Source of the DNA: Mobula hypostoma
Lineage: Eukaryota
Direction: 5' to 3'
NCBI RefSeq assembly: GCF_963921235.1
Contig: NC_086105.1
Location: 39,804,001-39,868,000, forward strand
DNA: 64,000 nucleotides
The position numbers and the translations under genes were made by a program. A model generated the notes under the pieces. That model worked only from the letters and a program-made list of their open reading frames with translations. It did no database searches and had not been told where the DNA came from. Of this stretch, positions 3,501 through 61,700 are shown piece by piece (the first letter of the stretch is position 1; every line of letters begins with the position of its first letter).

Positions 3501-3754
3501 CATGATCCTTTGATGTGGTTCATCCACTTTGATCTTTTGTCCACTGTAACACCGTTGACATTGGGTTTCTTACTGTGTCAATTGCAAACTGAAGCTTATC
3601 AAAAACTCTATAAGTGAGCCCGTCAAAAACAATGGGTTTTACAAGACCTTCCAGAAAACATTGGGCATAACTCACCTTTCTACTTATAGCCTCTGTTTTT
3701 AATTCACCTTCTCCATTTGCAATATTTTTCATTCAAGAATATTGTTTACTCATT

Positions 3755-3850
3755 CACAAGATTAAAGGAGAACAAAATAATTGTTACTCCAGATGCCGTA
3801 CAGCATATAAAAACACATTAAGTTAAAGAAACACAATAATAAAAAAATGC
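3755..3850 (-). mobile_element. Rex1/Babar-type 3' terminal fragment
   Basis: aaggagaacaaaataattgttactccagat matches 56290-56320. Confidence 0.6.
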
Positions 3851-9449: not shown

Positions 9450-9552
9450 GGAGTCCTGTTGATGTGCCTTGGCCTGAAATGTTGACTGTTTACTCTTTTC
9501 TATAGATGCTGCCTGGCCTGCTGAGTTCCTCCAGCAATTTGTATGTGTTGTA
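9450..9552 (+). mobile_element. Penelope terminal-repeat mini-insertion in the Gypsy 3' LTR
   Basis: agtcctgttga...gaaatgttgact...gatgctgcctggcctgctgagttcctccagc; interrupts the LTR homology. Confidence 0.8.
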
Positions 9553-10139
9553 TAAATAACGTTCACATTGGTCAAGACATGCCACTACCTGACACCTCTC
9601 GCTGGTCCAAAGAGTTCTTAATAGGAAGCCTCCCCCACACCCCCATGGCCAGCACCTGATGGCCCAGGGCAATTAGGATAATTGTTATGAAAGTCCATGA
9701 TTAGTTCAGGGTCCAGAACGTCATGAATAGGGAACCCAGCATCTTTCCTCCAGGCCATAGTGATCCCAGTCTACAAGATATTGTCTTGTCATAAACAGAA
9801 TGAGAGTCCAGTAGTTGCCTGTGTAAACCTGTTGTCTGTTGAGAAAACGAGCAGGGGTAGGAACCTTGGTGTCACACCTTGCTACCGGGTGTGGGTAAGC
9901 GTGCCCGATGAGGGTCACTAGTTGTAAAAAAAAAGGATGGCAAGCTGCAAAAGCACATTAGTGCAAGGAGTTTTATTTAGTGCCAGGTGGGAAAAAATGC
10001 AAAAACTGCCCAAAAGTTGTGAAGAAAAATGTATTTGCAAATAGACAAATGAAAACAAACATGTGTGTACAAAATTTTACAAATGTACGGAGGCTTTCTC
10101 CATGACACACTATTGTTTTAAATTTTACAATACAGTATA

Positions 10140-10620
10140 ATGAAGGGGTTAATATCTGAGGAGCGTTTGGCAGCTTTGGGCCTGCGCTCACTGGAACTTA
10201 GAAGAATGTGGGGAGGGGTGCGGGGAGGCGGGATCTCATTGAAACCTACCAAATGTTGAAAGGAATAGATAGGGTGGATGTGGAAAGGATGTTTCCTATG
10301 GTGGGGGTATCCAAAACTAGAGGGAACAGCCTTAAAATTGAGGGGCAACTCTTCAGGACAGAGGTAAGGAGGAATCATTTTCAGCCAGAGATTAGTAAAA
10401 CTGTGGAATGCTCTGCCACAGACTGTGGTGAAGGCCAAGTCCATGCGTATACTTAAGGCGATAGTTGATTGTTTTCTGATTGGTCAGGGTATCAAGGGAT
10501 ATGGCGAGAAGGCAGGTGTACGGGGTTGAGTGGGATCTGGGATTAGTCATGATAGAATGGTGGAGCAGACTTGTTGGGCTGAATGGCCTAATTCTGCTCC
10601 TATGTCTTCTGGTCTTATGA
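10140..10620 (+). mobile_element. CR1 3' fragment nested in the Gypsy
   Basis: DLIETYQMLKGIDRVDVERMFP; 3' UTR and tail present. Confidence 0.9.
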
Positions 10621-13600: not shown

Positions 13601-14071
13601 GGATATGGAAGCGAACCCCGCTCCGGTAGGTGAAGTGGACGGTCAGATAATCATAGATGTCAAACCCTCCATAGTTTGCTTTTCAGGAGTAGACAAGACA
13701 TAGAGCCGCCCCTGAGGAGGACACGTACCAGGTAGTAAATTGATGGTGCGATTGTAGTCTGCATAGTGGTTCTCCTCTTGTTGAACACCTCCAACTCTGA
13801 AGGAACTCTAGACAGCTCCGTTGAGTTCAAGTCAAGGTCTTGTGGAGTCAAGAAGCAACTTGACTGATGTCGCAACATGGTTCACAGTCAGTCACTTGGA
13901 CACTCAGGCAGGCCTCTTGGAACCTCTTGCAAGGCACTTCTCCTGGCATAAGGTTGACCAACCCTGAATGGTGCCAGAAGACCAGTTAATCCAAGGATTA
14001 TGAGGATGTAACCGCAGATAATCAAGGATTGGGGGAATGTCTGAAGAATGAATAAAATGGAAATGAATCAT

Positions 14072-14770
14072 GGAACATAAAACATAGAAAATCTATAGAA
14101 CATTACAGGCCCTTCGGCCCACAATGTTGTCCTGACCATGTGACCTACTCTAGAAGCTGTCTAGAATTTCCCTTCTGCATAGCCTTCTATTTTTCTAAGC
14201 TCCATGTACCTATCTAAGAGACTCTTAAAAGACCCTTTTGTATCTGCCTCTACCACCTTCACTGGCAGTGCATTCCACACACACCATCACTCTTTGTGTG
14301 AAAAACTTACCTCTGACATCCCCCTTGTACCTACTTCCAAGCACCTTAAAACTATGCCCTCTTGTGTTAGCCATTTTAGCCCTGGGAAAAAGCCTCCGGC
14401 TAGCTACACAATCAATGCCTCTGATCATCTTATACACCTTGATCAGGTCACCTCTTGTCCTCTGTCACTCCAAGGAGAAAAGCCCAAGTTCACTCAAGTT
14501 TTCATATGGCATGCTCTCCAATCCAGTCAGCATCCTGTGCACTTTCTCAATATCATCCACATCCTTCCTGTAATGAGGTGACCAGAACTGAGCACAATAC
14601 TCCAAGTGGGATCTAACTAAGGTCTTATATAGCTGTAACATTACCTCACATCAACTCAATTCCATGGTTGATGAAGGCCAACACACCATGTCTTCTTAAC
14701 AACACTGTCAACCTATGGACATGGACACCAAAATCTCGTTGATTCTCCGCACTGCCAAGAATCTTATGAG
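14072..14770 (-). mobile_element. CR1 3' fragment inserted in the Gypsy protease
   Basis: YKMIRGIDCV...RGHSFKV; TSD GAATCAT at 14065-14071 and 14771-14777. Confidence 0.9.
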
Positions 14771-15254
14771 GAATCATCTCCTTGTGTTTTCCAATGGTCA
14801 ACTTGAAAGTGACGGAAACATTCCAATGGTCTACCACCCAAGGCCATAACAGAGATAGGCTGGTCGAGGTGTACCTTAGGAATTCGCATAACAAGCACAG
14901 TGAAAAACACAGTGACGGCTTCATGATAAAAGTAGTCATTAGTAACTCTAATAAACACAAAGAAATGACATTAAGGTGTGTCGAGACCTGTCGTTACCCA
15001 GTGGCCCCTGCTGCTGTGATGGGTTCATGACAATCAGACTTTTCAATCTCTCCTCAAACAGCAAACACAGGAGCAGTCTAATAAATCCTCATCATTTCTG
15101 CCTGGCTGGTACACAAACTTTTAGGAAACCAAAACTGCACAGGTATTTCAGGCACAGTCCCTCCAGGGCCCTATGTAATTGCAATAAGTTATCTTCTGCA
15201 CTCAAATCCTCCCCTAATAGCAAGCATATATTCAGTTTGCTCTGCTACATGCTG

Positions 15255-15360
15255 AAAATGCTGGAGGAGCTCAGCAAGTCAGGCAGCATCCAAGGAGGGG
15301 AATAAAGAGTCAACGTTTTGGGCTGAGATCCAGCATCTGCAGAAACTCCGGTGTCTATGA
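15255..15360 (-). mobile_element. Penelope terminal-repeat fragment
   Basis: atgctggaggagctcagcaagtcaggcagcatc motif. Confidence 0.7.
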
Positions 15361-15909
15361 TTTGTTCTGCAAATTGCTTGTGGTGTCTGTGTACAAAGCT
15401 ACTCAATTCTCCTTGAACATCAACATGTCCCATCAAGTTTTTCCAACTTATGTTCCGTCTGCCACAGTTCCTGCCTGTTCACTTAGCGCGTGTCCTTGAA
15501 GCCTCTTTACATCCTCCTCCAGGTTCAAAATAGCACCTTCTGTATCTCTGTATTATCAGCAAACTATGAAATACTGCATGATCAAGAGAGTGTTAATTAA
15601 TCCAATTAAGGGGAAAATCAGTGAATGTGGTGATTTAGATTTTCATAATGCTTTCAATAAGGTCTGATAATGGCCAGAAAACAAGGGAGTAAAAAATAAC
15701 TGCACCTTTCTCGGATGGGAAGACCCTGAACAGTGGGGTACTGCAGGGATCGGCAGAAATAGGTAGTGAAATTCAGGGCTCTGGACTTACTGGTCATCTC
15801 AGGCTGTGTTAGCTCAGAGGGAAAACTGAGCCAATAGCAGGGATAGAATAGTCAGTTCTGATACAGAGAGAGTGAATTGCCTGAATTCAAAGCTGAGTCC
15901 AGAAGGAAG

Positions 15910-16350
15910 TCAAAATCAACATTATTGTTATATATGCAAATGCATGTATGTAGAGGTGTAATGAAACTCTTACTTGGAGCAGCGTCACAGGCACATGGCA
16001 TCATTTCAGAAACATTCACTAGAAAAATATTCATTAGACATAAATTAAGTGCAATTTCACAGCAAAATTTAAAGCACCAAAAATGTTAATTTTACTGCGA
16101 AGTGGTCCAGTTTTGTTAAACTGTAGTGATTAAGGTTTTGCCAGCTGGTTCGGGAACTGACTGGCTGACGTTGCTATTCTTTAACCTGGTGGTGTGGGAC
16201 TTCAGGCCTCTGTACTTCTTGCTGATGGTAGCTGTGAAGTGGTAGCATGGTCCAGATGATGAGGATCTTTGATGATGAATATTGCCTTCTTTAGGCAGTC
16301 CTCCTGTAGATACTACCAATGGTGAGGAGGGACGTGCATGCCCATAAAGT
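15910..16350 (-). mobile_element. Rex1/Babar-type LINE 3' fragment
   Basis: KYRGLKSHTTRLKNS motif and the family 3' UTR. Confidence 0.7.
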
Positions 16351-16399
16351 ACTTGGTCCCGCTGTGAGTGCTGGATCCCACAGACAGAGAGATGGATCT

Positions 16400-17340
16400 G
16401 GGAGAGAGAACTAAAATGGTAGGAACAGAGCTGTGAAACCACCCTGCAGAGCTGGTCTGTGAAGCAATCACAGAAAATACATATGTTTTTTTCCATTGTA
16501 GGAGAGAAAATTTTGTGAAAAGACTGCAGTAGACCGGAATAGAAGGCATGGGAATTAATCACTGCTTCACCTGTTCGATTCCGCGGATGGTGAAGAGGAA
16601 ATAGATGAATGGATTGTTGTTGCATGGGAATGTGCCTTAAGGGGAATGGCTGCAGGGGGCAGAACCAGACAATTACAAAAGGACATGGACCCTTCAAAAT
16701 GCTGTGAAGATGGCGATGATCCGTGTCTGGCGGGGAAATCTTATTGACATCGGCAGAAATTGTGATGGATGATGCACTGAAAGCAGACGATGACAGGATG
16801 AAATGTGAGGACCAGGGGAAAACTATTCATGCCCTTGTGCCAAGGTTGACAGCAGAGATGCAGGAAATAGACCAGTTGCAGTCAAGAGTTCTGTCAATTA
16901 TGATGGAGGGGAAGCCATGGTTCAGGAAGAAGGAAGGAGTTTCAGGGGCACCCCTGTGGAAAGTCTCAACGTTGGAGCAAGTAGGATGGAGATGGAGGAA
17001 CTGAGAGAATGCCATGGAGTTCTTATTGGAAATAGGAATGGAGAATTTCTGGCCAAGATAAATGTACAGGTGTGTAGCCTTGTTATGGCTGTTTGTTGCT
17101 GCCCTACTCCCTGGGATAGAGACAAAGGAATTCCAACGGGGAAGGAAAGAAACAGAGATTACAATGTGAAGGTGAGGGCAAAGTAGAAATTGACATCAAA
17201 AGTAACAGTGTTTTCCACTTCTGTATGAGTGTTGGAAGCAGCACCAAAACAAGTGTCGATGTACTGGAAAAGAGTCGAAGATGAAGCTTGAAGAGGACTG
17301 AAACAAAGGCTACTGAAAATATGATTTGTGCTAAGGCAAG
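16400..17340 (-). mobile_element. Penelope-like element remnant (RT and linker)
   Basis: AFSQFLHLHPTCSNVETFH...SFFLNHGFP resembles the PFSQFLRLRRICS motif of fish/shark PLEs. Confidence 0.75.
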
Positions 17341-17754
17341 AGGACTTGAAGATGCTGTGGAAATTGATAGCATTTGTCCAAAAAAAATTAAACTGGAGTG
17401 AAGGTGGGTGGGACTTGGTTTGGGCTCAGTGGACTTCTGAAGTTGGTTCGGGTCTGGTACGTTCAACCTTCTGCCTTTCCCTGATTTAGAAGCTGTAAGG
17501 AGAATTTACTGGCTTCTAGGACAGACAGAGTAGTTATGATTAGTAAACAGCATTTTTGTAGCAACATAGATCATGATCCAGTCAGTTCAATCTACAGATC
17601 CACGTACGTTCGATTTAAATAAACATCACTCTCAGAGCTGAGAGGGAGAATGATTCAAACTGCTTATGTAGTTAGTAGTTTTGGCACCTGGTTCAGCCTG
17701 TTTGTCAAAGTGGTGTACCCAGGTGTGACTGCTGTTGCACGCAAACAGCTATTT

Positions 17755-19236
17755 CAAAGTTCAAAGTTAATTTATTATGTGTCACCACATACAGCACTGA
17801 GATTCATTTTCTTGTGAGCACACTCAATAAATCTACTGAATAATAACCATAACAGAATCAGTGAAAGACTGCCCAACTTGGGCGTTCAATCAGAGTGCAG
17901 AGGACAACAAACTGTACAAGTACAAAATGAAAGAAATAATAAATAAATAAGCGATATATATCAAGAATATGAAATAAAGAGTCCTTGAAAATGAGCCAAT
18001 TGCACGCCCATCGCCTACCTCTGGTGCTCCTCCCCACTTTTTTCTTTCTTCAAAGGCCTTCTGTCTCTTTCACTAATTAACTTCCTGGCTCTTTGCTTTT
18101 CATCCCTCTCCTCCCCCAAGTTTCACCTATCGCCTGGCGTTTATCTCCCTCCTCCCCCCACCTTTCAAATCTACTCCTCAGCTTTTTTTTTCTCCAGTCC
18201 TGCTGAAGGTTTTGGGCCTGAAATGTTGACTGTACTTTTTTCCATAGATGCTGCCTGTCCTGCTGAGTTCCTCCAGCATTTTGTGTGTGTTCCATTGGTT
18301 CTGGGAATATTTCAATGTTGGGGCAAATGAAGTTGAGTAAAATTATCCTCTTTGGTTCAAGAGCCCGATGGTTGAGGGATAGTAACTGTTCCTGAACCTG
18401 GTGGTTTGAGTCCTGAGTCCTGTATCTTCTTCCTGAAGGCAGCAGTGAGAAGAGAGCATGTCCTGGGTGTTGGGAGTCCCTGTTGATGGGTGCTGCTTTC
18501 CTGCTACAGCATTTCACTTAGATGTGTTCAATGGTAGGGAGGGTTTTACCTGTGATGGACCAGGCTGTATCCACTACTTTTTGTAGGATTTTCCATTCAA
18601 GGGCATTGGTGTTTTCATACCAGGCTGTGATGCTGCCTGTCAATACACAGACACATCTCCACAAACTCCTAAGGAAGTAAAGGCACTACTGTGCTTTCTT
18701 CGTAATTGCACTTACTTGATGGGCTTAGGACAGGTCCTCTGGAATAATAACACCGAGGAATTTAAAGTTACTGACCCTCTTCACTTCTGATCCTCTGATG
18801 AGGACAGGCTCATGAACCTCTGGTTTTCTTCTCCTGAAATCAATAATCAACTCCTTGGTCTTGCTGACATTGAGTGAGAGGTTGTTGTTATGGTGCCACC
18901 CAGCCAGATCTTTGAACTCCCTCCTGTATGCTGATTCATCACTACCTTTGCTTTGGCCTACAACAGTGATACCAGCAGGAAATTTGAATGTGGCATTGGA
19001 GCTGTGCTTAGCCACACAGTCGTAAGTGTAAAGCGAGTAGAGCAGGGAGCTAAACACACAGCCTTGTGGTGCACCTGTGCTGATTGAAGTTGTGGAAGAG
19101 ATGTTGCCAATTTGCACTGACGGGGGTCTACAAGTGAGGAGATCAAGGATCCAATTGCACAAGGAGGTATTGAGGCCAAGGTCTTGGACCTCATTGATTA
19201 GTTTTGAAATGATGATGGTATTGAATACTGAGCTGA
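17755..19236 (-). mobile_element. Rex1/Babar LINE (RT and 3' UTR) interrupted at ~18000-18290
   Basis: [57 protein letters not shown]; tail tcaaagttcaaagt. Confidence 0.9.
18002..18291 (+). mobile_element. Penelope terminal repeat with degenerate type I hammerhead (18195-18232)
   Basis: CAGTC-CTGCTGA-AGG/CCT stem-GAAA-TG-TT-GACTG. Confidence 0.8.
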
Positions 19237-19242
19237 ATTTAG

Positions 19243-19716
19243 AGCCACAGGTGTGAGCTGAGTGTCCAGTGGAGACCAAAAGTTGAGTAAGCTGTCCCAG
19301 AATGGACACAACAAGCCCCTTTACCAAAGGTACTATCTCTACCCATAGACTGCTTTGACCAGGTGGGCTAAACCAGGTTAGAGTAGTGGGTGGGCCTCAT
19401 ACCCTAGTAAGATAGGGACATACCTGTTTCAGCATGCCAAGACAGCTCCAGCAGACTGGCAGAAGAGATTAACAGTGAGATTCAATGGCCGAGAAGGAAG
19501 TTCTGCAATGCTTTGTGGAGGGTGAAGAGCATGATAAGGTACATAAGAAGTCATGGTCACCCACTGCAACAAGGAAGACCCCCCCATTGTGCCATGTACC
19601 ACTGGACCCAGATTTCCAAGGTCAAGAGAGTAGAACTGGCCCCGTGCAACAGCTTTTCCACTTTTAAGACTCTCCCACACAGGTTTCCTGTCATCATTGG
19701 ATATGACAGACGACCA
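19243..19716 (+). mobile_element. RTE-derived non-autonomous element
   Basis: Structured 5' part (GTGTCCA/TGGACAC stem, GGGCTAAACC) and RTE-like 3' hairpin tgtcatcattggatatgaca; no ORF. Confidence 0.55.
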
Positions 19717-20014
19717 ATCAGTTTTGGCTACATGCATAGTAAATGTGACATTCCAGAGATCTGCAAAGAAGTCATACAAATTTTTGAATTGTTCTATATT
19801 TTCTCCATCATATTTTTCATGCAGAGTTTATAGTCTCAATCCCACCACAAATTGCCTACAAAGTGGCACATCTTTGTGAATTGTGCATTTGTGCCAAGAG
19901 ATAAAGTAGTCGTTGTCTAGATTCATCTCAAGTACCCAGAGGTCAATGAATGATGCTGGGTATCACATATGTTAATCACATGGACTTCTGCTGCTACGGC
20001 TTTCCTTCCTTCTT

Positions 20015-20170
20015 TCTATCCACAAAGATTAAGGATGACTTCCGGCGTTTTCCTAGAGTGGTTGATGAGGTCAATTTGGGAACTGCAAACTGTCCTCATG
20101 AGTGGGATGGATAGTGTGATATGTAGCAGTGGGTGGGCTGTTTGGGATGCTGTGCACTCCTTCCATTTCC
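20015..20170 (-). mobile_element. RTE 3' end fragment
   Basis: Similar to 4310-4460. Confidence 0.5.
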
Positions 20171-21009
20171 AAAATCTTAGTGGTGTTCCTGTCAGAGAGA
20201 ATATCAGCACTTTCTCCATTGTGAACAATTACAGTTTAGGGATTTCTATCATTTTGTGATGATAACTTTTTTTCAAGCAATGATTCCTATTCTGTTGTGT
20301 ACTGTAGAGATTGGAAGTTCATATACAAAATGTCTCATGCCATACTTACAGCTTAGTACATCAAGTCAGAACCTTTGTTATCACAGAAATGGACAATGCA
20401 ATGCAACTATTCCATGCTGTAGGTGCATTCCATTTGAGCTTCCTTGTGTCTTCACCTTCTTTAAATATATCACTGTATACCTCTGTTACCTTGTCCCTGA
20501 ATTACTTACCTAGCCTCTCAAACATTCTTCCATTCATAGTTCTTCAATTCATCTCACTCAAACCAGGCACAGTTCCAAATTCACAGCTCTTCTTGTGTGT
20601 GCAAGTTTCTGATAATCATGCCTTCCATTGATATTTCCTACATAGAAAGATTCCCTTTTCATTGTTTCATCAAAAATCCTTCATAATTTTACAAATGTCT
20701 GAAATCACTCCTCAGTTTTCTTTTCTCCTGAGAGAAGCTACTCAGTGTGGTTCATCTTGATATAAACTCACATTTCTGGCATTGTCCCTGCAAATATTCT
20801 TTCCACCATTGATGTATTTTTATGCATATATAATGCCGCAAGCAGAAGTAAAGACAGTACAATAAGTGTAGTCTAACCATGGTTCTATAGCACATTTAGA
20901 GCATTTCCCTACTTAATTTAGTTGTTCCAGAAATAAACTCTGCTGTGTGGTTTGTCTTTTTCTATGTGACTTTGATAGCCTTTGGTGCAACTTCTATGGT
21001 TTTTGTGTT

Positions 21010-23922
21010 TGTAATCTGAGATCTGCAATCTGTTGAGGGCCAGATCAGTGGCAATCAGGTCTGGCAACCAAGTAATGTGCAAGAAGCCCAGGTACAACCT
21101 CCGGAAAGCCATCTCACATGTGAAGTGGCAATCCTGGACCAAACTTGAATCTCTGAAGGATGCTCGACAGCTATGGCGGGGCTTGAATGCTATCACCTCC
21201 TACAAAGTTAAAACAAGCAACACAGGTTACGCAAACAACAGGAATTCTGCAGATGCTGGAAATTGAAGCAACACACATCAAAGTTGCTGGTGAATGCAGC
21301 AGGCCAAGCAGCATCTGTAGGAAGAGGTGCAGTCGACATTGAGCTCAGTGCCTTTTATGCTTGCTTTGACCATCTAAATATGGAGGCAACTTCACAAACT
21401 CCCGAAGCCCCTGATGACCTTGTGATTTCGGTTTCTGAGGCTGATGTGAGAGCCTTCTTCAGGGTGGTGAATCCATGGAAAGCATTTGGCCCAGATGGGT
21501 TACCTGTCTGAGTACTATAGACCTGTGCTGATCAATTGGCTGTAGTGTTCACTGATATCTTTAACCTCTCGCTTCGGCAGTCTGAAGTACAATCTGCTTC
21601 AAGCAGACGACAATTATACAGATGCTTAAGAAGAACATGGTAACCTTCCTGAATGACTTACATCCAAAGTATTTTGAGAGGCTGGTAATGAAACATGTCA
21701 ACTTCTGCCTGAGAAATGACTTGGATCCGCTCCAATTTGTCTCCCGTTACAACAGGGCAACAGCAGATGCCATTTCGTTGGCGCTTCGCTCAGCCTTACT
21801 TCACTGGATAACTTCACTTAACTCCACTTGCTCCATCACCGAGATGCTCCCACAAGCTATGGGCTCCTTTTAAAGGACTTCATCTTACGTTCTCGATATT
21901 TATTGTTTATCATTATTATTATTTTTATTTATTTTTTCTCAGCTCAAGCTGGTAAACCTGAGGTATGGGCATAGCTAAGCATGCTCATTTGTCAATTGCA
22001 AGGAACTTTCAGACTATTCTAGTGGTGTTTAGTATTGTAGCTTTCTGAAGACTTACTTCTGAAGATATTACTGTGTAGCCCTAATTGTTTAATGCTATTG
22101 TGCAGTGCCTTTGGGATGATAGTGGTTACAGATATTACTATCAAGGCAATACATACCCTGTTCATGTTCCAAAGTCTTTCAATTTCCTCTTTTACTTCAT
22201 CATATTTCTGGTGTTTTTCACTTACTTCTGTAAGTTATGTGTATTTGGAATGGCTATATCTATTAAATAAGCAGTTCTTGCTTGTTTATCTTGCATTATC
22301 TTATCCGAACAGTCATTATGAATTGTTCTATCTGTAATAACTGATCAGTCATAATATAATTTGTGGTTATCTGACTCCAAAGCTGGATCAGACTTGTATT
22401 TATAGTAAGGTATGATTTAATTTATGAGTTTGTATTTTAAAGCAAGGTTTTGATGAATGATGTTTGTCACTTGATTGTGCCTGTGTAAATAATCAAATCG
22501 TGTTAAACTGCTACAGGATCCTGTAATGCATTGGCTTCCTTCTGGTTTTTCTTTGTATTTGCAATTTGTTGTATTTTACACACTGGTACCTATTTGGTTC
22601 AGTCTTTCATTGATTCTATTATGGTTATTGGATTTATTAGTATGCCAGCAAGAAAATGAATCTTAGGGTTGTATATGGTAACATATATGTACTTCGATAA
22701 TAAATTTACTTTGAACTTTGAACCCTGGAACATCTGGACAGTGAAAATGCATACATCAGGATGTTCTTTGTTGACTACAGTTTGGAATTTAGTACTCTCA
22801 TCCTTCAGAACAAATCAGTAAGTTTCCAGACCTAGGCCTCAATACCTCATTGTGCACCTGGATCCTCGATTCATCATTTGACCCCAGTGAGTTTTGATCG
22901 GCAGCAACATCTCCTCTACAATCTCTGTGCGCCCAGATGCACCACAAGTCTGATCTACTCACTTAATACGTATGACTGTGAGGCTAAGCATAACTTCAAA
23001 GCCGTTTTGTGGCGACAACACTGTCGACGGCGAATCAGATGTGTAGTTAATCAGCATATGGTGGGGGGAGATTATAAATGTGGCTAGTGGTGCCACAACA
23101 GCAACCTTTCACTCAATGTCAGCAAGTCCAAGGAGATGATTATTGACTTCAGGAGGAGGAAACCGGAGGTCCAAGAGCCAGCCCTCATCGGGAGAATTAG
23201 ATGTGCAGAGGGTCAGCGATTTGAAATTCCTCGGTTTTATAATTTCAGAGGATCTGTCCTGGGTCCTGCACGTAAGTGCCATTATAGAGAAAGCACCTCT
23301 ATTTTAGAAGTTTGCGAATATTCGGCATGTCATCCAAAACTTTGACAAACTTCCATAGGTGAGCGGTAGAACGCATCACAGCCTGGTATGCAAACACGAA
23401 TGCCCTTGAACGGAGAAGTCTACAAAAAGTAATGGATGCAGCCCAGTCCATCACGGGTAAAGCTCTCCCCACCATTGAACACATCTACCCGGAGCGCTGT
23501 CAAATGAAACTAGCATTCAGGTCATTCCCTCTTCTCCTTGTTGTCAGGAAGGCACAGGAGCTTCAGGACTCACACCACCAGGTTCAGAAACATTTATTAT
23601 CCCACAACCATCAGGCTCTTGAACCAGAGGGGAAAACTTCACTCAACTCCACTCGTCCCATCACTGAACTATTCGCGCAATCTATGTACTCGCTTTCAAG
23701 GACTCTGAAACTTATTTTCTGGATATTTATTGTTTTTTTTCTTTTGTATTTGCATAGTTTGTTGTCTTTTGCGCATTGGTTGTTGGTCCATCCTAATGGG
23801 GCGGTCTTTCATTGACTCTATTGTGTTTCTTCCAGTTACTGCGTATGTCCGCAAGAAAATTAATCTCGGGGATGCATATAACGACTTGTATGTATTTTGA
23901 TAATAGATTTACTTTGAACTTT
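21010..23922 (+). mobile_element. Rex1/Babar LINE split by nested insertions (A: 21010-21798 and 22723-23922; B, a 3'-end copy: 21799-22722)
   Basis: [38 protein letters not shown]; the reading resumes at ccctggaacatctggac (22723); two tails actttgaacttt at 22709 and 23911; PLE insert at ~21225-21340. Confidence 0.85.
21938..22551 (-). mobile_element. R4/Dong-clade non-LTR retrotransposon, 5'-truncated
   Basis: Reverse complement matches 57445-58030 (CITGSCSS, YLHRHNQV, PD..D endonuclease region, same 3' UTR CCTCAGGTTT...GCTGAG). Confidence 0.85.
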
Positions 23923-24711
23923 AAGCTCTGTTTATCTAATTCCCCACTTCTTTCGCACCTTGCCAGTAATAAGTAACCTCTCTATTCTTAAGGAAATAAC
24001 TACCTCGTATTTATATGGTGAGCTTCACTTGGCAATCATTTACCCACATTGCCTTCCTGTTGTTTGTCAGTGCTGGAATTCTGCGTACACTTGCCCCCAC
24101 GCATCCACAACTTCACTTCCCGGGTGCTTGATTTTTGTTTTGACAGGAAGGAAATGTGGACGAAGAGGAAGTTTTTCACTCACTCACTGATCAGTGTCGA
24201 GGCAGTCCATTTGAGAAATAAACCACGGCGTCCACTCTTTGCAAGGAGCAGCTGCCGAGTGCAATAGACGCCTGTAGAACCCCTTCGCTCGTTCCATTAT
24301 ATATTCCCTTTGCCTTTTCAGCCATTTAATCTCCCTCTCCATTTCTGTACACTTTAAAAACGTGTTTATTTCATGAAGCCAACCCCAACGTTTTGCTCCC
24401 TTTCCGAGCCGAGGTCTCCCCTGCTGAACACTGCCAATCCCCTTCGTTTTTTAAAATTTCAGATGTCTAGTTTCCCCGATATTTGACGTTTCTTGGCAGT
24501 GGGGAATCCCTTCCCTTCTGCTAAGGGAATAAAACCCTATAAACTTAGGAAAGTGTTCAGGTGAACTGCCTGGGTTTTCCTGAAAGGAGTCTTTCTGTCA
24601 GAGTAGGAGTTGTACCGCAGCTGATTGTGTCCCCGGGATTAAGCTGCGTGTCAGGGACGAGGCTGCTGTAAGGGGTCGTGGATCGAAAATCCACACCCCT
24701 TCCAACAAACA

Positions 24712-48633: not shown

Positions 48634-49337
48634 TGTCATAGTCCGGTCCGTGAAATCCATATTCCGGTTCAAGGTCCGGTCCATCGACCCTTGCTCCAGG
48701 TTTTCCTTTCGACCCTGTTTCTGTCCTTGTTGAGCTAATTGAGGCAACTGATGCTATTTGGGACTGGCTGCATAAATACCTCCAGAGAGCAGGGCCTGGT
48801 TGCTGGATTGTTCTTGTCCTTACTGCTTGGATTCCCTCCTCTGCCTTCTGTTTCCTCACCTGAAGCCCTGCCTTGTGTTGCCGGTAACTCTTGCCTCACC
48901 TGAAGTTCTCGTCTTGCCTTGCTTTGCCAGTAGCCTTGCCTTGTCTTGCTGTCTGGTCCTGGAGCCACCCTGTACCTAGCTCCTTTCCTGTCCCTTGCCT
49001 CCGCCCAGGTAAGTCAGGCCGTCTTGCCGTTACCTGGGGTTGGTTCTGTCCCTTCCTGTCCCTTGCGTCCACCCAGGTAAGCCAGGCTGTCTTGCCATTA
49101 CCTGGGGTTGGTTCTGTCCCTTCCTGTCCCTTGCCTCTGTCGGGTGGTGATCCATGCCTTGCCCAGGAGGAGCCTGCCAAATCTCAAGTCTCCTGCCTCA
49201 CCTCGAGCCTGTAGATTTCTAGGTTCCTGGTTTTCCTGTCCATGTCCTTGCCATCGTCCTGTATCCTAGTCCTGCCCCTAGTACTTTAGTGTCTGTGTCT
49301 TGCACTTGGGTCCGTTCCCAGCCGTGCCCTTATGACA
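48634..49337 (+). mobile_element. Gypsy-type solo LTR inside a decayed CR1
   Basis: TGTCATA...TATGACA termini, 5-bp TSD TCTAT, CATAAATA box at 48771, internal 68-bp tandem repeat. Confidence 0.92.
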
Positions 49338-52670: not shown

Positions 52671-53344
52671 AAAGTAGTTGGAGGGACAAGCGCAGAGTAC
52701 AAGTGCAAACACACAAAGTTTGAGTACTACAGTGCTGTGTTGGCACAAAAGGAAAAAAGCTGCAGCTTCATAAGCTGCATTGGGGTTACCTACGAAGGCA
52801 TTTGAATCATTCATATTCTACATGGCCTGGAAGGAGATGCTTATGAAGGCCAATGCTACCTTTGAGCTGGAGGAGTGTACTGATAATGCGCAGGCATTGA
52901 ATGTGCAACGTTACTTCCAGAGATCTGCTCTGGAATATATTACACACACGCTAATAACTTCACAGAAACTAAAGTTATCTGTTTGTAATGGTAGCCCAGA
53001 GTTTTGAAGAATACTTTAACCTACGGCTGAATGAAGTAGCAGAGACCTATAAAATTCAGTGCATAGATTGAAAGCTGGAAGAAACTATCAGTAATTATAT
53101 GATCATATTCAAAATCTTGTCATGGTATTGTATTTTTGGATCATGAATTCAGAGACAGGTTTATATGTGTTCTAAGTGCATAAAGGATTGAATTGAAGGT
53201 GTTTTGCACAATAAAAGCTTTACTGGATTTTGTATGTTTAATTGTGATGGAGTTGAAATGTAATTGCAATAGAGAAAGCAGCGATGAATTCTAGGCATTT
53301 CTTCCGTAGTATTTTCCTCTTGATCCCCTTTTTCCTGCTTTACC

Positions 53345-54202
53345 AGAATCAGCATCAGGTCTATAATCACTGACATGTGTCCTGAAATTTGTTGTTTTGC
53401 AACAGCAGTAGAATTATCATAGGTTACAAAAATGGATAAATATCACAAAAAGGGGAATGATAGACCATTCAGAAATCTGATGGCAGAGGGGAAGAAGCTG
53501 TCCTTAAAACATTGAGTGTGGGTCTTTGGGATCCCGTACCTCCTCCCAAATGAAGAAGGCATGTCCTGGAATGTGAGGGTCCTTAACAATGAATGCTAAC
53601 ACCTTGAGGCACAGCCTTTTGAAGATGTCTTTGATGACCAGGAAGGTTATGCTGATAATGGAACTAGCTGAGTCTATGACTCTCTGCAGTTTCTTGCGAT
53701 TCTGCGCTTTGGAGTAGGCTGTGATGCAATGTCAGAATGCGGTCCACCATACATCTGTAGAAGTCTGCACAAATCTTTGGTGACACACCAAATCTTCTCA
53801 AACTCCTAATGAGGAGGAGCCACTGCCCTGTCTTCGTGATTATATCAATAAATTCTCTGAGGTGTTGATGCTCAGGAACTTAAAGCTACTCACCCTTTCC
53901 ACCACTGACCCCTCAATGACAACTGGTGTGTGCTCTCCTGACTTCCCCTTCCTGATGTCCACAATCAGTTCCTTGATCTTGCTGACATTGAGAGGGAGGT
54001 TGTAGTTATAAAACTTCTCAACTTGCTGACTTATCTCACTCCTGTATGCCTTCTTGTCTCTATATGAGATGCTGCCAATAGCAGTAGTGTCATCAGCGAA
54101 TTTATAGATTGTGTTTGAACTGTGCCTAGCCACATAGTTGTGAGCGTAACAGAGTATAGCAGTGGCTAAGCACACATCCTTGAGGTGTACCTGTGTTGAT
54201 TG
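53345..54202 (-). mobile_element. Rex1/Babar LINE fragment
   Basis: IYKFADDTT, LNVSKIKELIVDIRK, VERVSSFKFL; tail atcagaatcagg-like. Confidence 0.88.
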
Positions 54203-56247
54203 GTCTTACTACAGTTTCTGGGATGCCACTGATGCTTAATAAGTAGTTAAAGATTTTGTTGGGGGTGGGGGGAGTGGGGAAGGATATCTCTTCATTTCAC
54301 TTTTTGAGGCTAGCCGTATGGAACTTGAGTTCAAAAAGGCATGGTAATGTGTACATTTGCAAGTTTTGCAGTCAGATTTACTTTTCAATATGAGGTCAAA
54401 GTGATAAAGCTCATGCAATAGTTATCACAGTCTCTTAATACCTCCTACTTTGGGATAATTTGTGGCAAAAATTTACATTTTCAGCCATTTGTTGTTACAT
54501 GCTAATATGCCTTTATCTTATGACAACAGTAATCATGTATTAGCTAAAGGTTGAACTTGCAGTGAGACGTTGTTTGTAATAATTCATGAACCAGAGCATG
54601 CTGGCATGTTTTATATATTTATTGCCTTTGAAATATTTAAATTATAATATAAAGTTCTGATATTAACAACTTATCCTAAACTGTTCTGATAGGCATTCAC
54701 AGTATGAAAAGTCTCAATTTTCTTCTGAATATTAGTGAATAATTACCCTTTCATAATTAACATAGTTTCATGAATAAGTTATTACAAAAATTCCAATAAT
54801 CCAGCATACATGTGGATTGGCAGATTTTCCAGAATATTAGATGTTAATTTGTCAACATAAGTACTGTACTTCATTTTTATTTTAGACATTACTTAGTATT
54901 ATTAATTTTCCTGTGTTTAATTTTCCTGGCTGTTCAACAATTATTCCGTAGCCATTGTGCTGAATATCTTTTCCCTGGATACTAGCAATCACGTTTCCAT
55001 AATTTATTATTCAATGTTTGAATATGACTGAAGCCAGTCTATGTGTTGTCTGTGTTGCCGTGGATCAGCATATTAACGATAGAGAGGAGGGGTCATAGAA
55101 GAACAACTTTAAGGCATTGGAGGTGACTGTGCTAGAGACAGGGATTCCAGTAACTGAAAAACATGAAAACTACGGCAATCTGAAATTTAAAGATAAACCT
55201 GGAGATTCTTGGTGATGCTCAGCAAGTCAGGCAGCATCTGTGGAGAAAGAATCAGTGTTAATGTTTCAGGGTGATGACCTTTCAATAGAAATATTACAAA
55301 TCCAAACTATTTTATGTTGGGGGGGTGGAGAAAACAAAGTGAATGTAATATAGGGTGGAAACAGGAGAGATTGAATGATGTGGTGTCCTTGAGGACTTAC
55401 AGTAATATTCACAGATAATCCACCTGGTTAATAGAGGGTGAAGGGAAACAAAGCAGGCTCTGGCTGATCAAAGCTGAGCCCATGGGATACTGAGTGGGAA
55501 AAGCAAAACTCTACAACTGCCAGCAGCCTGGAAGGAAAACAGAATGCTGGATATCTTCAAGAGAATGGCATAGGTCTAAACTACGTCTGTCTTTTTCTTT
55601 TTGCTCTCTTAATCCTTGATCCACTCTTACATCTCCATTCAGAACTGTATTTCTGCTTCTTCCTGCACTCTTAGAGAACTTGAAGGTTTCACCACCTTGC
55701 TTGCCAGCTTCCATCCTGCTCTCATTTTTATGAGGTTCATTCCTGACTCTTCCCTCCTTCTTCTCAACTTGTCCAACTCTGTCTTGAGTGTTGTCAGTGA
55801 ATAATATCTATTACAGGACAAAACCTCCCCTCTGTCTCCATTCTTCTTTTTACCTCTGTCTGTCTGTTGTCCATTGATGTGCTACTTACATAGATCCACC
55901 ACCCGCAGACAGCAAGTTGTCACAGTTAATAGCTTGCATTCCTATTCTATTCATTAAAATCTCTTTTCCAAGAAGATTGGTGAGGTTGTTAATTCAACAG
56001 CACCTTAGAAGTAACTTGTATGGGTCCAGAATTACTATTCATTCCATCTTGGTAGAATTTCACTGGGCAAATGCTGTGGAATATATGAAAGCATTCAGTA
56101 ATTATTTACTTTGTTTATTTGGCAGTTTAAAATAACAAAATCAAAGCTGTGATGGGTAGAAATATGAAATTATAATTTGTTTGAACATAAGAGAATGCAC
56201 CCATTTTAAATAATGATAATTGAGATTAATAATAGTACTTTTCTCAT

Positions 56248-58715
56248 AAGATTCAAGACTGTTTAATGTCATTTCCTGTATACAAGTGTAAGGAAAATGA
56301 AATAATTGTTACTCCAGATCTGATTCCTACAACATCTGATGAGGTATTGGTGTACAAGAATCACTCTATCTTTTAACAACCAAAACAAAACAACCACCAT
56401 TATCAGAATAAATTGAGATATTTTCCAGGGCAACTCTCTAAGCCCACTATAGTTTTGTCCAGCTTTAAATCTGCTCTCTAATTTACTGAATCAAATCGGA
56501 GACAACCAAGTGAATTATACCTTGACACATCTTCTATACATGGATAATTTTAAATTATATGCTCCATCATCAGTAAAGCTAAAACAATTAATTTAAATAG
56601 TAGAACTATTTTTAAAAAGTATAAACATGAACTTTGGACTAGATAACTGCAGAACATTAAACATAAAAAAAGGTGCTGTAGAGCTAGTAGAATTTAAAAC
56701 AGAGCAGCTGGATGCAACACAATCGATGGATGAATATGAAACATTTAAGTTTCTGGGATATCAACAATCAAAGAAAATAGATCATTGTGCACTAAAGGGA
56801 AAACTTTTGACAGAATTTACTTCAAGGCTTAAGAAAATCTGTCAGAGGTCAATAGTAAAAATATAACACAGCCAATTAACACTTTCGCTGTACTCATATT
56901 AATGTATTCTTTTTTATATAATATCTTGGTCTGAAATTGATCTGGAAAATATACAAAGAAAAATAGGAACTGAAATGATAAATTTTAGAAAACACCATGA
57001 ACATTCAAACACACTTCAATTAACACTACATAGGACAGAAGGAGGAAGAAGAATAACAGACATTAAAAATTTACACAACAGTCAGCTAAAAACTACTAAG
57101 GATATATTTTCATCAATGAAAATGAAAATTTCAGCACTCCACAAGACCATATGCAATTCTGATAAGAAGTACACACCACTAAACTTAAATGAAAGCACAA
57201 TCCTAAAAAATGAAGAAATTAACACTACAGAAGAAAAAGTTAATATTGGAAGAGCATGGCCTCTATGGAAGACATTCCCATGATCTGAGCAGAGGCGATA
57301 TTGACAATGAAACATCAAACACCTGGCTCAGAGTAGGAGACCTCTTCCCAGGGGTTTCTCGTAACAATACAGGACCAGGTGGTTAACACAAAAAGTCATC
57401 AAAAATACAAAATAAAAGACCACCAAATTCAAGACAATAAATGCCAAGAGAAATCAGAAACAATCCAACACATTACAGAAACTTGCAGCAGTTTACCTCA
57501 ATCTGATTACTTCCACAGGCACAGTCGAGTGGCAAACATCATTCACCATAAACGACACCATACCTTACTATAAATACAAGCCTGATCCAGTTTTAGAATC
57601 AGATTCCTACAAATTATATTACAACCGATCCATTATTACAGAGAGGACAATTTATAATAACTGTCCAGACATAATACTGCAGCGTAAACAAGCAGGATTA
57701 ACTTAATAAATATAGCTGTTTCAAATACACATAACGTACAGAAATAAATAAGTTTACAACACTAGAAATATGCTGAACTAAAAGAGGAAACTGAAAGATT
57801 TTGGAATATGTACAGGGTATACATTGTCCTGATAGTAATATCTGTAACTGGCATCATCCCAAAGGCAATAGCATTAAACAATTAGGGCTACATGGTAATA
57901 TCTATGTAAATCTCTGGAAAGCTACAATATTAAACACCACTAGAATAGTCTGAAAGTTCTGAGTGATTGAGAGATGAGTGTGCATGACTAAGCCCATACC
58001 TCAGGTTTTGCCCGCTTGAACTGAGTAAAAATAAAAATATTCATAAAGCACAAAATAAATATAAATACATAAAATAGCTTATATATATAGATTGATTCTG
58101 TGTGCGTTAAGTGACACTAGACCGTACATTATGTGACTGATGGGAAATAATAAAGGAGAGGTGGAGTTAGTGGGTGAAGGTGTTGATCAACTTTACTGGT
58201 TGGGAAAAGTAACAGTTTAAGCATCCGGTGCTCCTGCCATGGATGCTACATAGACCCCTCCTAATGGGAGTGTGACAGACAGTTCATGAACAGACTGTGT
58301 GGGAGCCTTCACGATGTTGGCTCCCTTTTCCGGCTCCTTTCTGCATATATGTCCTTGACGACAGATAGGCTGGTACCAGTGATACGTTGGGCAGTTTTGA
58401 CAGCCCGTTGTAGAGCCTCCCTGTCTGCCGCTGTGCAGTTTCCACACCAAGCAGCGACACAGCTTGTTAGGATGCTCTCTACTGTACATCTGTAGGATAA
58501 CGTGAATATTGATGTGCAAAGCCCAGCTCTCTTCAGTCTCCTCAGCTTCCTTGATGAGTTGTTGAGCTTTTTTGATTGTGTAGACTGTGTTCTGGGACCA
58601 TGAGCGGTTTGTGATGCGCACTCCCTGGCGTCTGAAACTGCTTGCACTGCTGTGTCGCCGATGTAAAGTGGTCTGTGAGTGGTGCGAGTTTCCTGAATTC
58701 CTGAAGGTGAATCCA
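56248..58715 (-). mobile_element. Rex1/Babar LINE 3' part (56248-56326 and 58041-58715) split by an R4 element
   Basis: YRCTVESILTSCVAAWCGNCTAADREALQRAVKTAQRI; 3' UTR on both sides of the insert. Confidence 0.85.
56327..58040 (+). mobile_element. R4/Dong-clade non-LTR retrotransposon (RT, CCHC knuckle, restriction-like endonuclease), decayed
   Basis: IFQGNSLSPL, HLLYMDNFKLYA, MNFGLDNC, FKFLGY, INTFAV, LHRTEGGR, IQDQVVNT, ETIQHITETC, RHSRVANIIH, TIYNNCPDII. Confidence 0.9.
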
Positions 58716-61700
58716 GAGATATGCAATTTGTATGCTTACAAGAGCGTGATCTTTTTGACAGGAGTAATGGGCAGACTGATAAGTAATGTTAGTAGGTTGT
58801 GTTCTGTGTCCGGTAAAAAGTTTGCTAATATCAGTGATTATCTAGGCATCTAAATTTTAAAAAAGGTTGAAAAGTTGAACAAAATTGTATTGACCTGAAG
58901 GTATAATTTATTTATTGCATATTGATTTATATTAGTAAAATTTTCTTCAATTTTTGCATTAAATGGAAATACAAAAAGTGTAAAAACTTGTAGGAATAAT
59001 TTTCTGTAAATTTGTCACACTGATTAAGGAAATTATTGTTCAGTGCAATAAAAGCAGACATTTACCATTCCCTTCTCCCTAAGGAGAGGGAAAATCAAAT
59101 ATATAGCAACATTTATTTCACATTTTAAAATTACAAATATCATCTATATGACATTCACATAATTGGCAATGTGTCACCATCTAGTGTGGTCTTAGGGTTT
59201 GACATAAGCTGATACTTTTGGAGTATTTGAATTACCATATTCAGACCATCAGTAAGCTGTGTACCTCTCTGCATTATTACAAATCCTTAATAGCAATGTT
59301 TCACAGCAGATCATTCAGTCAAAATAGATTAAATTAACTAAGTATATCAGTAAATATTATCGGACAAAACCACAATTTTAGAGCCAAAGTCTAATTACTT
59401 TCATAATTACCCTGTGGAAATTACAAATATTAATGAAGAAAATGTTTTAAATAATCTCTTTATGAAAAATGCTACTGAAGCTGTTAGACCCTCTTAAATT
59501 GGATTCAGTGTTTTAAAAATCTATTTATTTAGTTAAGGTTGTTTGAGAGTTAGGGTTGTAAATACATATACTTAATCTCACAGCAATGTGAATATCATTG
59601 CATAAATCCAGGGGCTGATTCAGAAAAATAATGTGAATTATTTTTAACGATGTAGTATCCAGTATAAATGAGTTTAAACGTTTTCAATTTCAATCAGAGG
59701 TTGAACAACTGCTGAATCAGAATGAATGAACTGAACCAAACTTGATGTTTAAATTCTACAGTAAGTTTTATATTACAATGACACTTACCCTTATAATATG
59801 GAACATAATTATAGACTGTGAAACTAACATAATTAGTCACTGAAATAAAGAGAGAGCACGGCACTATGATAAGGGGAATGAAATTGTAATAGGTTCGCAA
59901 TAATTGAAAGGAATAGCATAGAAATTATGGGAATGGCAGTGTAATCTCTTGAGATGATCTCAGAGCTTTATTTAATCACCGGAATAATACTGCTTAATCA
60001 CTGACTAAAGTATCACTTAAAGCCAGTTTGAACACAGCTTTCTGTTCTGGTATGATTGTGCCACACTAATACAACATACATAAAATTAATTCCTCAAACA
60101 ACTTTTCATGACTCTATTTCTGCAGTCTGAAACTCTCGTGGCCCTGTTTTAATCTGAAATTTCTCAATCATCTGAATATATTCCACGAGTGTGACTTTGA
60201 TAATATTCCCACCTGCTTAAGTGATTGTTCTGTATGGGGCATACATGGATTTTTAATTATTTTTGAAAATGACTCATTTGCATCACAGCTAAGGCTGTAC
60301 TGTTAAAAAAAAATAGAACAACATCTCTTGATGGAACCAAACATTTGTATCTATTAGTATAATTCTGGGCCAGAATTTAAATTAATAATTTAGCTGTAAA
60401 TGTCAGTGATGTACATCTGTGAGCTTTGTGGAGTATTTTTATGATCCAGATTGAGATGCAAGGTCATATTGAATATTTTAAGCCTGAGTAATAGAGGCAT
60501 TGCTGAGAAAGTTATTTCATGGAGATTGACTGAGATTGATGGTAGGCAGATGGTTTGTTGTCCATAATTTGCCATTTTGTGGGTTGAATTTTCATTTCGA
60601 ATTCCAACTTTCAGTAGGGTTATTATGGTGGAAGTGCCTGTGGTGCAAATGCATGAAAATGGTTGCATATGTTAAGGACAAATTAAATTGACCTTATTTA
60701 CCCCATTTGTTGGTCTCAAACACTTCATTTGTTGGTTTAGTGATATAGATAAAGATGAGAGGGAATGATATAACTTGATTAAATGTATGCTGCATTGTCC
60801 TTCATTTTAGATGGTGAGGGTTGTAGTAAACTGTTGGCCAATAGTTTATTAAGGACTGGTGGGGCCATCTGACCACTTGCTCTGTTCATGGACTTGTCAG
60901 AGAGTCTTGGGGCTGGATTGTGCATTGTAAGTTATACTGAGGTGAAGGAACAGATACCCTTTGTATCTGTGGGACTAGATGGCACATTCATTTGAATTTG
61001 GATGCTATTTTGAATTCACACGCTAAGGTTAATTAGTTTTATTTTGTTCATTTTATATATATCTCTACATATTAATGAACAGAATTTTGATATTTCAACA
61101 TTTTTTTTCCTCAACACATTTTAAATGTGAGGTTATCAGCAGATATCCCAGCAGCTTCTTCCAAGGCGTTTAGCACAACTCTGCACAGCCACAGGGTCTT
61201 TCAGTTATAACTACACCACATGGTGGGATCTGAGCAAGCTCTGCAGATCTCAGATGCTGTGACAACTCATGCTAGCTTAACCTGCTATCAAAGCTTTCTG
61301 ACAGATTGAATCCTTATGAAAGTCACTGACATTCAGAGACTTTGAAAAGCTATTGAAAATTAATTTTGGTATTCATCGTTTGAAAATTCATAAATTTTTC
61401 AAGTCTGTTTTTGTGTTTTAGTAAAATAATGAAGAACAATTGTTAATGTAATTCACCCAAAGAAATATAAGTTACTTGTTACTTGCCTCTCCTCATGTTG
61501 AAATAGATGGTATTGCTTGATCCATGCCTGGAAACCAGCATTGGCTCAGCAAGTAGATTTCCCAGTGCCCCTCTGGATGAACTACACAGTGGTGCTTTAC
61601 CACTGGATTTCATGAGGAAGGCAGTCAGAAACACCTCAGGAAATATTGGATTTCCAATTCCGCGTGCACTTGAATGATGGTCCTGATATTCCTCATTGTT

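What the first reader, a model, noticed from the sequence alone, without database searches (positions are those of the whole stretch)
56248..58100. R4/Dong LINE inserted antisense into the TAA-rich 3' UTR of a Rex1 LINE (2 of 2 copies)
Seen: the R4-clade element (56327-58040, +) splits the 3' UTR of a minus-strand Rex1 element, with its tail running into the A/TAA-rich tract. The second copy (21938-22551, -) splits the 3' UTR of a plus-strand Rex1 copy at a (TTA)n tract. Both are antisense to the host. Known: Dong elements of the R4 clade target (TAA)n repeats with a restriction-like endonuclease. Inference: in this genome the abundant Rex1 3' UTR may serve as the main landing pad, a transposon-on-transposon targeting relationship. 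n=2.
Basis: partly seen in the sequence, partly recalled or inferred. Interest (0 to 1): 0.7.

Follow-up and report, generated by a model that had tools for sequence, protein, structure and literature searches.

The report
Dong-like LINE nested in Rex1-like tails
Two dead, front-truncated copies of a Dong-type jumping gene each sit backwards inside the A/T-rich tail of another jumping gene (Rex1-like), most likely because this family homes to A/TAA-rich runs and Rex1-like tails supply many of them.

Summary
The window has exactly two copies of one LINE with a restriction-like endonuclease (RLE): about 56324-58025 (+) and 21938-about 22551 (-). Both are 5'-truncated and decayed. Each lies antisense in the 3' UTR of a Rex1-like LINE, with its 3' end against an A/TAA-rich run.

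For copy 1, contigs from three related species join 56291-56324 directly to 58043-58058. The flanks are therefore one continuous UTR elsewhere, and this is a true insertion with about 7 bp lost. For copy 2, two uninterrupted UTRs in the window bracket the site.

"Dong-type" is supported by behaviour. Relatives are about 1190 aa with RT, CCHC and PD-D-K motifs. All five contigs fetched for relatives start in (TAA)n and four end in (AAT)n. Placement in the R4 clade rather than HERO could not be tested, because no labelled references were available. The Rex1 label is also untested.

The "main landing pad" idea is untested. Rex1-like UTRs hold roughly 25-44% of comparable A-rich tracts in the window, so 2 of 2 is unremarkable. 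Antisense orientation follows from strand-specific targeting. An earlier unchecked note of this scan reports the same family stacked in a free TAA microsatellite.

Verdict: an ordinary consequence of known Dong-type targeting.

The parts
56324..58025 (+). Copy 1 of the Dong-like RLE LINE. It is 5'-truncated within the RT domain and decayed. It holds the RT palm/thumb remnants, the CCHC motif (about 57440-57540), the RLE (about 57580-57740), the C-terminus (about 57960) and a short 3' UTR ending in GAACTGAG.
   Evidence: tblastn with relatives, E about 1e-60; frame translations; motif alignment
58026..58042 (+). A/TAA-like run (TAAAAATAAAAATATTC) at the 3' junction of copy 1. It may be the insert's tail and/or the remainder of the host's A-run.
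   Evidence: Sequence. Joints to the host UTR resume at 58043-58058.
56248..56323 (-). Distal (3'-terminal) part of the Rex1-like type F 3' UTR. It is the host of copy 1 and ends near 56248.
   Evidence: Depth jumps from about 13 to about 79,000 at 56238-56371. Loose ends at 56248 and joints from 56291-56324 to 58043-58058.
58043..58726 (-). Proximal 3' UTR (58043-about 58200) and C-terminal ORF remnant (58309-58647) of the Rex1-like type F host. The host is 5'-truncated near 58700.
   Evidence: ORF list; 32-34% aa identity to other Rex1-like C-termini in the window; depth profile
21938..22551 (-). Copy 2 of the Dong-like RLE LINE, comprising its last 600 bp or so: CCHC, RLE, C-terminus and 3' UTR.
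   Evidence: 76% identity to 57439-58035; tblastn with P0001, E 1e-38; translation
21894..21937 (-). A/TAA-rich run next to the 3' end of copy 2 (AAAAAATAAATAAAAATAATAATAATGATAAACAATAAATATC on the insert's strand). It is partly native host tract and partly possibly the insert's tail.
   Evidence: Comparison with uninterrupted UTRs A and C
21806..21893 (+). Left part of Rex1-like 3' UTR fragment B, the host of copy 2.
   Evidence: 75% identity to 23631-23735; alignment
22552..22730 (+). Right part of Rex1-like 3' UTR fragment B, ending in (ACTTTGA)2.
   Evidence: 72% identity to 23743-23930 and 71% to 17926-17753; TRF
23631..23930 (+). Uninterrupted 3' UTR of Rex1-like copy A. The empty site is GATATTTATTG-T8-CTTTTGTATTTGCA, around 23725-23745.
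17753..18003 (-). Uninterrupted 3' UTR of Rex1-like copy C. Its empty site has a native TTATTTATTTATTATTTCTTTC stretch.
3740..3850 (-). Short uninterrupted fragment of the type F 3' UTR, spanning the site occupied in copy 1.

Best explanation
Two independent, old insertions of one Dong-like family of RLE-encoding LINE landed in A/TAA-rich runs. These runs happen to be the antisense strand of a T/TTA-rich stretch in the 3' UTRs of two diverged Rex1-like LINE lineages. Inferred mechanism, by analogy with R2 and Dong: the RLE nicks the T-rich strand (the Rex1 sense strand) at the end of the T-run. The exposed 3' OH primes reverse transcription of the element's RNA, whose 3' end is a short UTR (tACCAGC-loop-GCTGAG) followed by an A/TAA-type tail. 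Reverse transcription stops early, giving the 5' truncation. The 5' junction is sealed by microhomology with a small target loss: about 7 bp (GCAGCAC) in copy 1, and an ambiguous 'AAATACAAAGAAAAA' overlap in copy 2. Because the A-rich strand fixes the orientation, every such insertion in a Rex1-like UTR is antisense. Rex1-like tails are very abundant in this genome, so they supply many of these runs. Shown: the identity, structure, junctions and contiguity of the flanks, and the (TAA)n embedding of relatives. Inferred: the nick position, the tail pairing, and that the specificity is for the tract and not for Rex1 as such.
For: RLE-LINE identity. Flanks contiguous in other copies, with GCAGCAC plus an A-run at the empty site: (tables 5, 5c, 7). 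Empty sites of the second host type. Relatives L001-L005 all start in (TAA)n and four of five end in (AAT)n, including a 5'-truncated copy (L001). The 3'-end motif is shared between the window copies, L001 and L004. Dong elements target TAA microsatellites and belong to the R4 lineage: PMC3812793, PMC3774820. Rex1-like UTRs hold 4/9, 4/11, 4/16 or 6/14 of A-rich AT tracts in the window, depending on threshold. Seven Rex1-like UTR sites lie in 64 kb, two of them occupied. Both families are very abundant in three species: table 2.
Against: Both native sites are mostly A-runs with scattered T (AAAAAAAACAATAAATA; GCAGCAC+An), not clean (TAA)n, so the target preference of this ray family may differ from classic Dong. 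After removing the two tracts that touch the inserts (these may be partly insert tail), Rex1-like UTRs hold only 14-33% of the tracts. That gives P(2 of 2) of about 0.02-0.11, which leaves some room for a real Rex1 preference. No other copies of the family from this genome could be sampled.
Confidence: 0.68

Rival explanations
1. True transposon-on-transposon specificity. This ray lineage recognises a sequence of the Rex1-like 3' UTR itself (for example TTATTG-Tn followed by TGC..AT) and uses it as its main target, as Tx1 LINEs use a DNA transposon.
For: 2 of 2 copies lie in Rex1-like UTRs from two lineages only about 33% identical in the C-terminal protein. Both are at the 3' edge of a T-run preceded by TTATTG, 90-130 nt downstream of the AACTCCAC box. 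Known targets of specific LINEs include transposons (PMC4640811, PMC5035012).
Against: n=2 and noticed post hoc. The tract census makes 2 of 2 unremarkable. Homology of the two sites is not robust in alignment. Five of seven Rex1-like sites in the window are empty. Relatives sit in plain (TAA)n. An earlier unchecked note of this scan (s1-144322) reports the same family stacked in a TAA-type microsatellite.
Confidence: 0.15
2. No target preference: chance nesting in a repeat-rich region.
For: The window is dense in Rex1-like copies, and nested TEs are common.
Against: The AT-rich UTR sites make up well under 1% of the window. Two random hits there, both with the 3' end on an A-rich run, would have P of about 1e-5 (own estimate). 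Relatives are clearly microsatellite-embedded.
Confidence: 0.05
3. Passenger model. An R4 fragment once landed in a Rex1 master copy, and Rex1 then spread the composite, so the copies reflect Rex1 amplification and not R4 targeting.
For: Host B is a 5'-truncated Rex1-like retrocopy that could have carried the insert when it landed in copy A.
Against: The two inserts have different truncation points (residue about 627 versus about 1008 of 1193), different host lineages and different junctions. They are therefore at least two separate insertion events. Many uninterrupted copies of both UTR types exist.
Confidence: 0.07

Closest known systems
Dong (Bombyx mori) and Dong-like elements (DongAg, DongBg), R4 clade of RLE-encoding non-LTR retrotransposons
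   Same: Single-ORF LINE with RT, a CCHC motif and a PD-(D/E)xK restriction-like endonuclease at the C-terminus. Relatives are embedded in (TAA)n on both sides. The 3' end of the window copies abuts A/TAA-rich sequence. The named close relatives of P0003, a full-length relative about 42% identical to the window element, are insects, including many Lepidoptera.
   Different: The host is a cartilaginous fish (a ray, according to earlier unchecked notes). The occupied sites are short impure A/T runs inside another LINE's UTR, not long pure (TAA)n. Clade placement by RT phylogeny was not done.
Rex6 / vertebrate R4-like elements (teleosts, Anolis)
   Same: RLE-encoding LINEs of the Dong/Rex6 group are known in most fish genomes and in Anolis (PMC4350176, PMC5753468).
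   Different: No labelled Rex6 sequence was available for comparison. The best database relatives of the window copies are only 46% identical or less.
HERO clade RLE LINEs
   Same: Same overall architecture. Some HERO families are microsatellite-specific (PMC4640811). Earlier unchecked notes of this scan report HERO-like elements in this genome.
   Different: The hammerhead-bearing or long 3' UTR that those notes describe for this genome's HERO elements is not seen here. The 3' UTR is short (about 70 nt) and ends in a TAA-type tail, as in the Dong-like relatives. This was not resolved by phylogeny.
Tx1L (Xenopus), and Kibi/Koshi/Waldo/Mino microsatellite-specific LINEs
   Same: These are precedents for LINEs that target another transposon or a microsatellite, with fixed orientation.
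   Different: They carry an APE-type endonuclease and belong to other clades. Tx1L recognises a defined site in a DNA transposon, which is not shown here.

Membership tests
RLE-encoding LINE (R2 group: R2, R4, HERO, NeSL, CRE) | Reverse transcriptase followed by a CCHC zinc-knuckle and a PD-(D/E)xK restriction-like endonuclease in one ORF | tested here: met
   RT remnants, CCHC, RPDI, IDIAxP and EK..KY motifs align with full-length relatives. Relative P0003 matches solved R2 proteins at E 4.6e-39. Pfam finds RVT_1 in P0003 and a weak, sub-threshold zf-RVT hit in P0001.
R4 clade (R4, Dong, Rex6) | RT-domain phylogeny grouping with R4, Dong and Rex6 references to the exclusion of HERO, R2, NeSL and CRE | not testable with these tools
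   No labelled reference sequences could be retrieved. Named relatives are only 'uncharacterized protein' entries from insects.
Dong-type elements | Insertion in (TAA)n microsatellites in a fixed orientation, with TAA repeats at both ends | tested here: met
   Met for relatives: L001-L005 all begin in (TAA)n, and L001, L002, L004 and L005 end in (AAT)n. In the window, both 3' junctions are A/TAA-like but impure, and the 5' flanks are host UTR.
Dong-type elements | 5' HDV-like self-cleaving ribozyme (reported for Dong and R4, PMC3774820) | tested here: inconclusive
   Both window copies lack the 5' end. An Rfam scan of the first 500 nt of full-length relative L002 found nothing at E<=1.
Rex1/Babar clade (hosts) | RT phylogeny within the CR1 group; a conserved C-terminal domain; a 3' UTR ending in short tandem repeats | tested here: inconclusive
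   A CR1-group-like RT (FADDTT) and C-terminal motifs are present. There is a weak hit to PF09004. The tails end in (ACTTTGA)2 or CTTGAAT-like units. The homology search gave no clade-labelled hits. The 'Rex1' label rests on my recollection and on earlier unchecked notes.
Transposon-specific LINE (Tx1L-like behaviour) | The great majority of copies lie at one defined site of another TE, beyond what target composition explains | not testable with these tools
   Only two copies were accessible. The window census shows no excess that needs this explanation.

The most novel reading that the evidence does not exclude
The ray's Dong-like lineage has shifted from free (TAA)n to a conserved T-run motif of Rex1-like 3' UTRs and uses that hyper-abundant LINE tail as its principal, orientation-fixed landing site. 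This would be an RLE LINE specific for another LINE.
Probability: 0.13. Interest if true: 0.55.

Novelty: new member of a known kind. Interest (0 to 1): 0.25.

Why it matters
If the preference were real, it would add a LINE-in-LINE case to the list of safe-haven targets of site-specific retrotransposons. It would also show how an abundant element's tail can support a second family. As it stands, the locus is a clean, well-resolved example of Dong-type insertion in a cartilaginous fish. The empty sites, a small target deletion and 5' microhomology are all visible. It is useful for annotating this genome's repeats but not surprising.

Tried and rejected
(1) Pfam on the ORF pieces of the window copies gave nothing for the RLE element and only weak hits for the hosts.
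(2) A word-index protein search with the 71-aa C-terminal piece of copy 2 found no candidates. This justified the exhaustive search, whose best hits were 46% identical or less. The ray family itself is therefore not represented, and I could not fetch more copies from this genome through proteins.
(3) Read laying at 80% likeness proved that the flanks are contiguous elsewhere. Contigs break at the repeats, so it showed neither whether the sister species carry the insertion at the orthologous locus nor what flanks other R4 copies. No loose-end pile-up at the element's 3' end appeared among the listed rows, and this is uninformative.
(4) Rfam on the 5' end of a full-length relative found no HDV-like ribozyme.
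(5) The original Dong and R4 papers (PMC309301, PMC307436) are not held.
(6) A homology search for the host RT piece gave no clade-labelled hits.
(7) An alignment of the two host UTR types across the insertion site was too low in complexity to prove the sites are homologous.
(8) The small conserved hairpin at the element's 3' end has no covariation.
(9) I rejected template switching by Rex1 RT as the origin, because the insert is antisense and the flanks rejoin cleanly in other copies.

Full report
**What is at the coordinates**

The stretch 56324-58025 (+) is a decayed, 5'-truncated LINE. Its three-frame translation shows these remnants:
- the RT motifs (IFQGNSLSPL, LLYMDNFKLYA, MNFGLDNC.., FKFLGY);
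- a conserved middle region;
- a CCHC motif (..KCQEKSETIQHITETC..DYFHRHSRVANIIH);
- a PD..D..K nuclease (..CPDIIL.., INIAV..N..K);
- a C-terminus near 57960.

A tblastn of full-length relatives against the window aligns copy 1 to residues 627-1178 of the 1193-aa protein P0003, with E about 1e-60. It aligns copy 2 (22560-21997, minus strand) to roughly residues 1008-1178. It finds no third copy. The two copies are 76% identical over about 600 bp. "2 of 2 copies" is therefore correct.

**The host of copy 1**

To the right, on the minus strand, lies a C-terminal ORF remnant (58309-58647) of a Rex1-like LINE. It is 32-34% identical to the C-termini of four other Rex1-like copies in the window.

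The key test was laying contigs of four public runs from three related species on 55300-59300.
- Unique flanks have depth of about 10-50. The segment 56238-58650 is highly repeated.
- Many contigs in every run jump from 56291, 56320 or 56324 directly to 58043-58058 (table 5).
- So in other genomic copies the two flanks form one continuous sequence. The 1.7-kb element is a genuine insertion into that 3' UTR.
- The letters between the sides of these joints (table 5c), the loose ends at 56324 (GCAGCAC followed by a long A-run) and those at 58054 (A-run, then CAC) give the native site.
- A short uninterrupted fragment of the same UTR at window 3740-3850 agrees.
- Compared with these, copy 1 has lost about 7 bp (GCAGCAC) of target. 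Its 3' end (GAACTGAG, 58025) is followed by TAAAAATAAAAATA and then the host's ATTCATAAAGCACAAAATAAATA.

**The host of copy 2**

The flanks 21806-21937 and 22552-22730 (+) match the two halves of uninterrupted Rex1-like 3' UTRs at 23631-23930 (+) and 17753-18003 (-). The break falls in a T/TTA-rich stretch just 5' of TTTTGTATTTGCA.

This host is only a 3' UTR fragment. It is itself inserted in the RT ORF of a larger Rex1-like copy, whose ORF stops at about 21805 and resumes at about 22731. The structure is a three-level nest.

One uninterrupted copy has only T8 at the site, and the other has TTATTTATTTATTATTTCTTTC. Part of the (ATT)n next to the insert may therefore be the insert's own tail and not native UTR. 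The 5' junction is ambiguous over about 15 nt, because AAATACAAAGAAAAA fits both the host and the element.

**What the inserted element is**

- Pfam on the window pieces was blank, and the word-index search found nothing.
- The exhaustive search with the longest uninterrupted piece (126 aa) gave 177 hits, the best 46% identical. Many are proteins of about 1190 aa.
- Pfam finds RVT_1 in the full-length relatives, and a weak sub-threshold zf-RVT hit in the partial relative P0001.
- Their best solved relatives are R2 proteins (E 4.6e-39).
- They align with the window pieces through the CCHC and RLE motifs.
- Named members are insects.

I fetched the contigs of five relatives. All five begin in (TAA)n and four end in (AAT)n. 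One of them, L001, is a 5'-truncated copy whose DNA is 64-70% identical to the window copies through the 3' UTR.

The extreme 3' end (tACCAGC-loop-GCTGAG) is shared by both window copies, L001 and L004.

Dong elements are the known TAA-microsatellite-specific members of the R4 lineage (PMC3812793, PMC3774820). Dong/Rex6-type elements are known in fishes (PMC4350176). The element therefore behaves like Dong.

I could not run the defining test for the R4 clade, an RT phylogeny with labelled references. HERO, which also has microsatellite-specific families (PMC4640811) and which earlier notes of this scan report in this genome, is not formally excluded. The Rex1 label of the hosts is likewise untested at clade level.

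**How it most likely works**

This is inferred by analogy with R2 and Dong.
- The RLE nicks the T-rich strand, which is the Rex1 sense strand, at the end of the T-run.
- The A/TAA-type tail of the element's RNA pairs there, and reverse transcription starts.
- Reverse transcription aborts early, giving the 5' truncations at residue about 627 and about 1008.
- The 5' end is joined with microhomology and a small target loss.
- The A-rich strand dictates orientation, so an insert in a Rex1-like UTR must be antisense. "Both antisense" is therefore not a second, independent observation.

**Is Rex1 the landing pad?**

The window holds seven Rex1-like UTR sites. Two are occupied and five are empty.

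A census of A-rich, A/T-only tracts on both strands shows that Rex1-like UTRs hold 4 of 9, 4 of 11, 4 of 16 or 6 of 14, depending on threshold. Without the two tracts that touch the inserts the share is 14-33%. Under plain A/TAA targeting, 2 of 2 has a probability of roughly 0.02-0.2. That is not remarkable for a pattern noticed after the fact.

Against random insertion the pattern is very unlikely: the sites cover well under 1% of the window. Some tract preference is therefore real.

Both native sites share TTATTG followed by a T-run, 90-130 nt downstream of an AACTCCAC box. That leaves room for a Rex1-specific reading, but the cross-lineage alignment is not robust. An earlier, unchecked note of this scan (s1-144322) reports the same family stacked in a TAA-type microsatellite, which points the other way.

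I could not sample further copies from this genome. The single read-laying run did not list loose ends at the element's 3' end. No tool searches this genome's DNA. The family has no close protein in the databases.

**Verdict**

The Dong-type identity and the A/TAA-tract insertion are well supported. The Rex1-specific "landing pad" is an untested extrapolation, and the simpler reading is that Rex1-like tails merely supply the tracts. This is a new member of a known kind, of low to moderate interest.

Noticed in passing
window 21000-23930: A three-level nest. A Rex1-like copy (+) has its RT ORF interrupted at about 21805/22731 by a roughly 290-bp 5'-truncated Rex1-like 3' UTR retrocopy, with a possible CTGG target duplication. 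That retrocopy in turn carries the Dong-like fragment.
   Followed up: partly
window 57995-58025 and 21938-21968; L001 1225-1245; L004 about 3838-3860: A conserved extreme 3' end, tACCAGC-(4-6 nt)-GCTGAG, forms a 4-bp hairpin just before the TAA-type tail. It is shared by the ray copies and by distant relatives. There is no covariation, so it may simply be a conserved RT-recognition sequence.
   Followed up: partly
L001-L005 (Logan/ENA contigs): The full-length relatives with names are all insects (Lepidoptera, Coleoptera, Diptera, Hemiptera). The best hit to the ray element is only 46% identical. Many contigs are 3.8-4.1 kb, that is, one element bounded by TAA repeats where assemblies break. 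Another first-reader note flags this family as a horizontal-transfer candidate; I did not examine that.
   Followed up: no
window 56238-56371 (table 2): The last 80-130 bp of the type F Rex1-like tail is far more abundant than the rest of that element in all three species: summed depth of about 79,000 against 5,000-22,000. This suggests many very short 5'-truncated copies, or a SINE-like non-autonomous family sharing this tail.
   Followed up: no
window 48981-49137: A 68-bp unit repeated 2.3 times at 92% identity (TRF score 272), G+C-rich. It was not examined.
   Followed up: no
window 53300-54175 (-): A further Rex1-like copy with a different tail type (...CTGATGCTGATTCTG). Its UTR has no insertion. 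At least three tail types of Rex1-like elements coexist in this window.
   Followed up: partly
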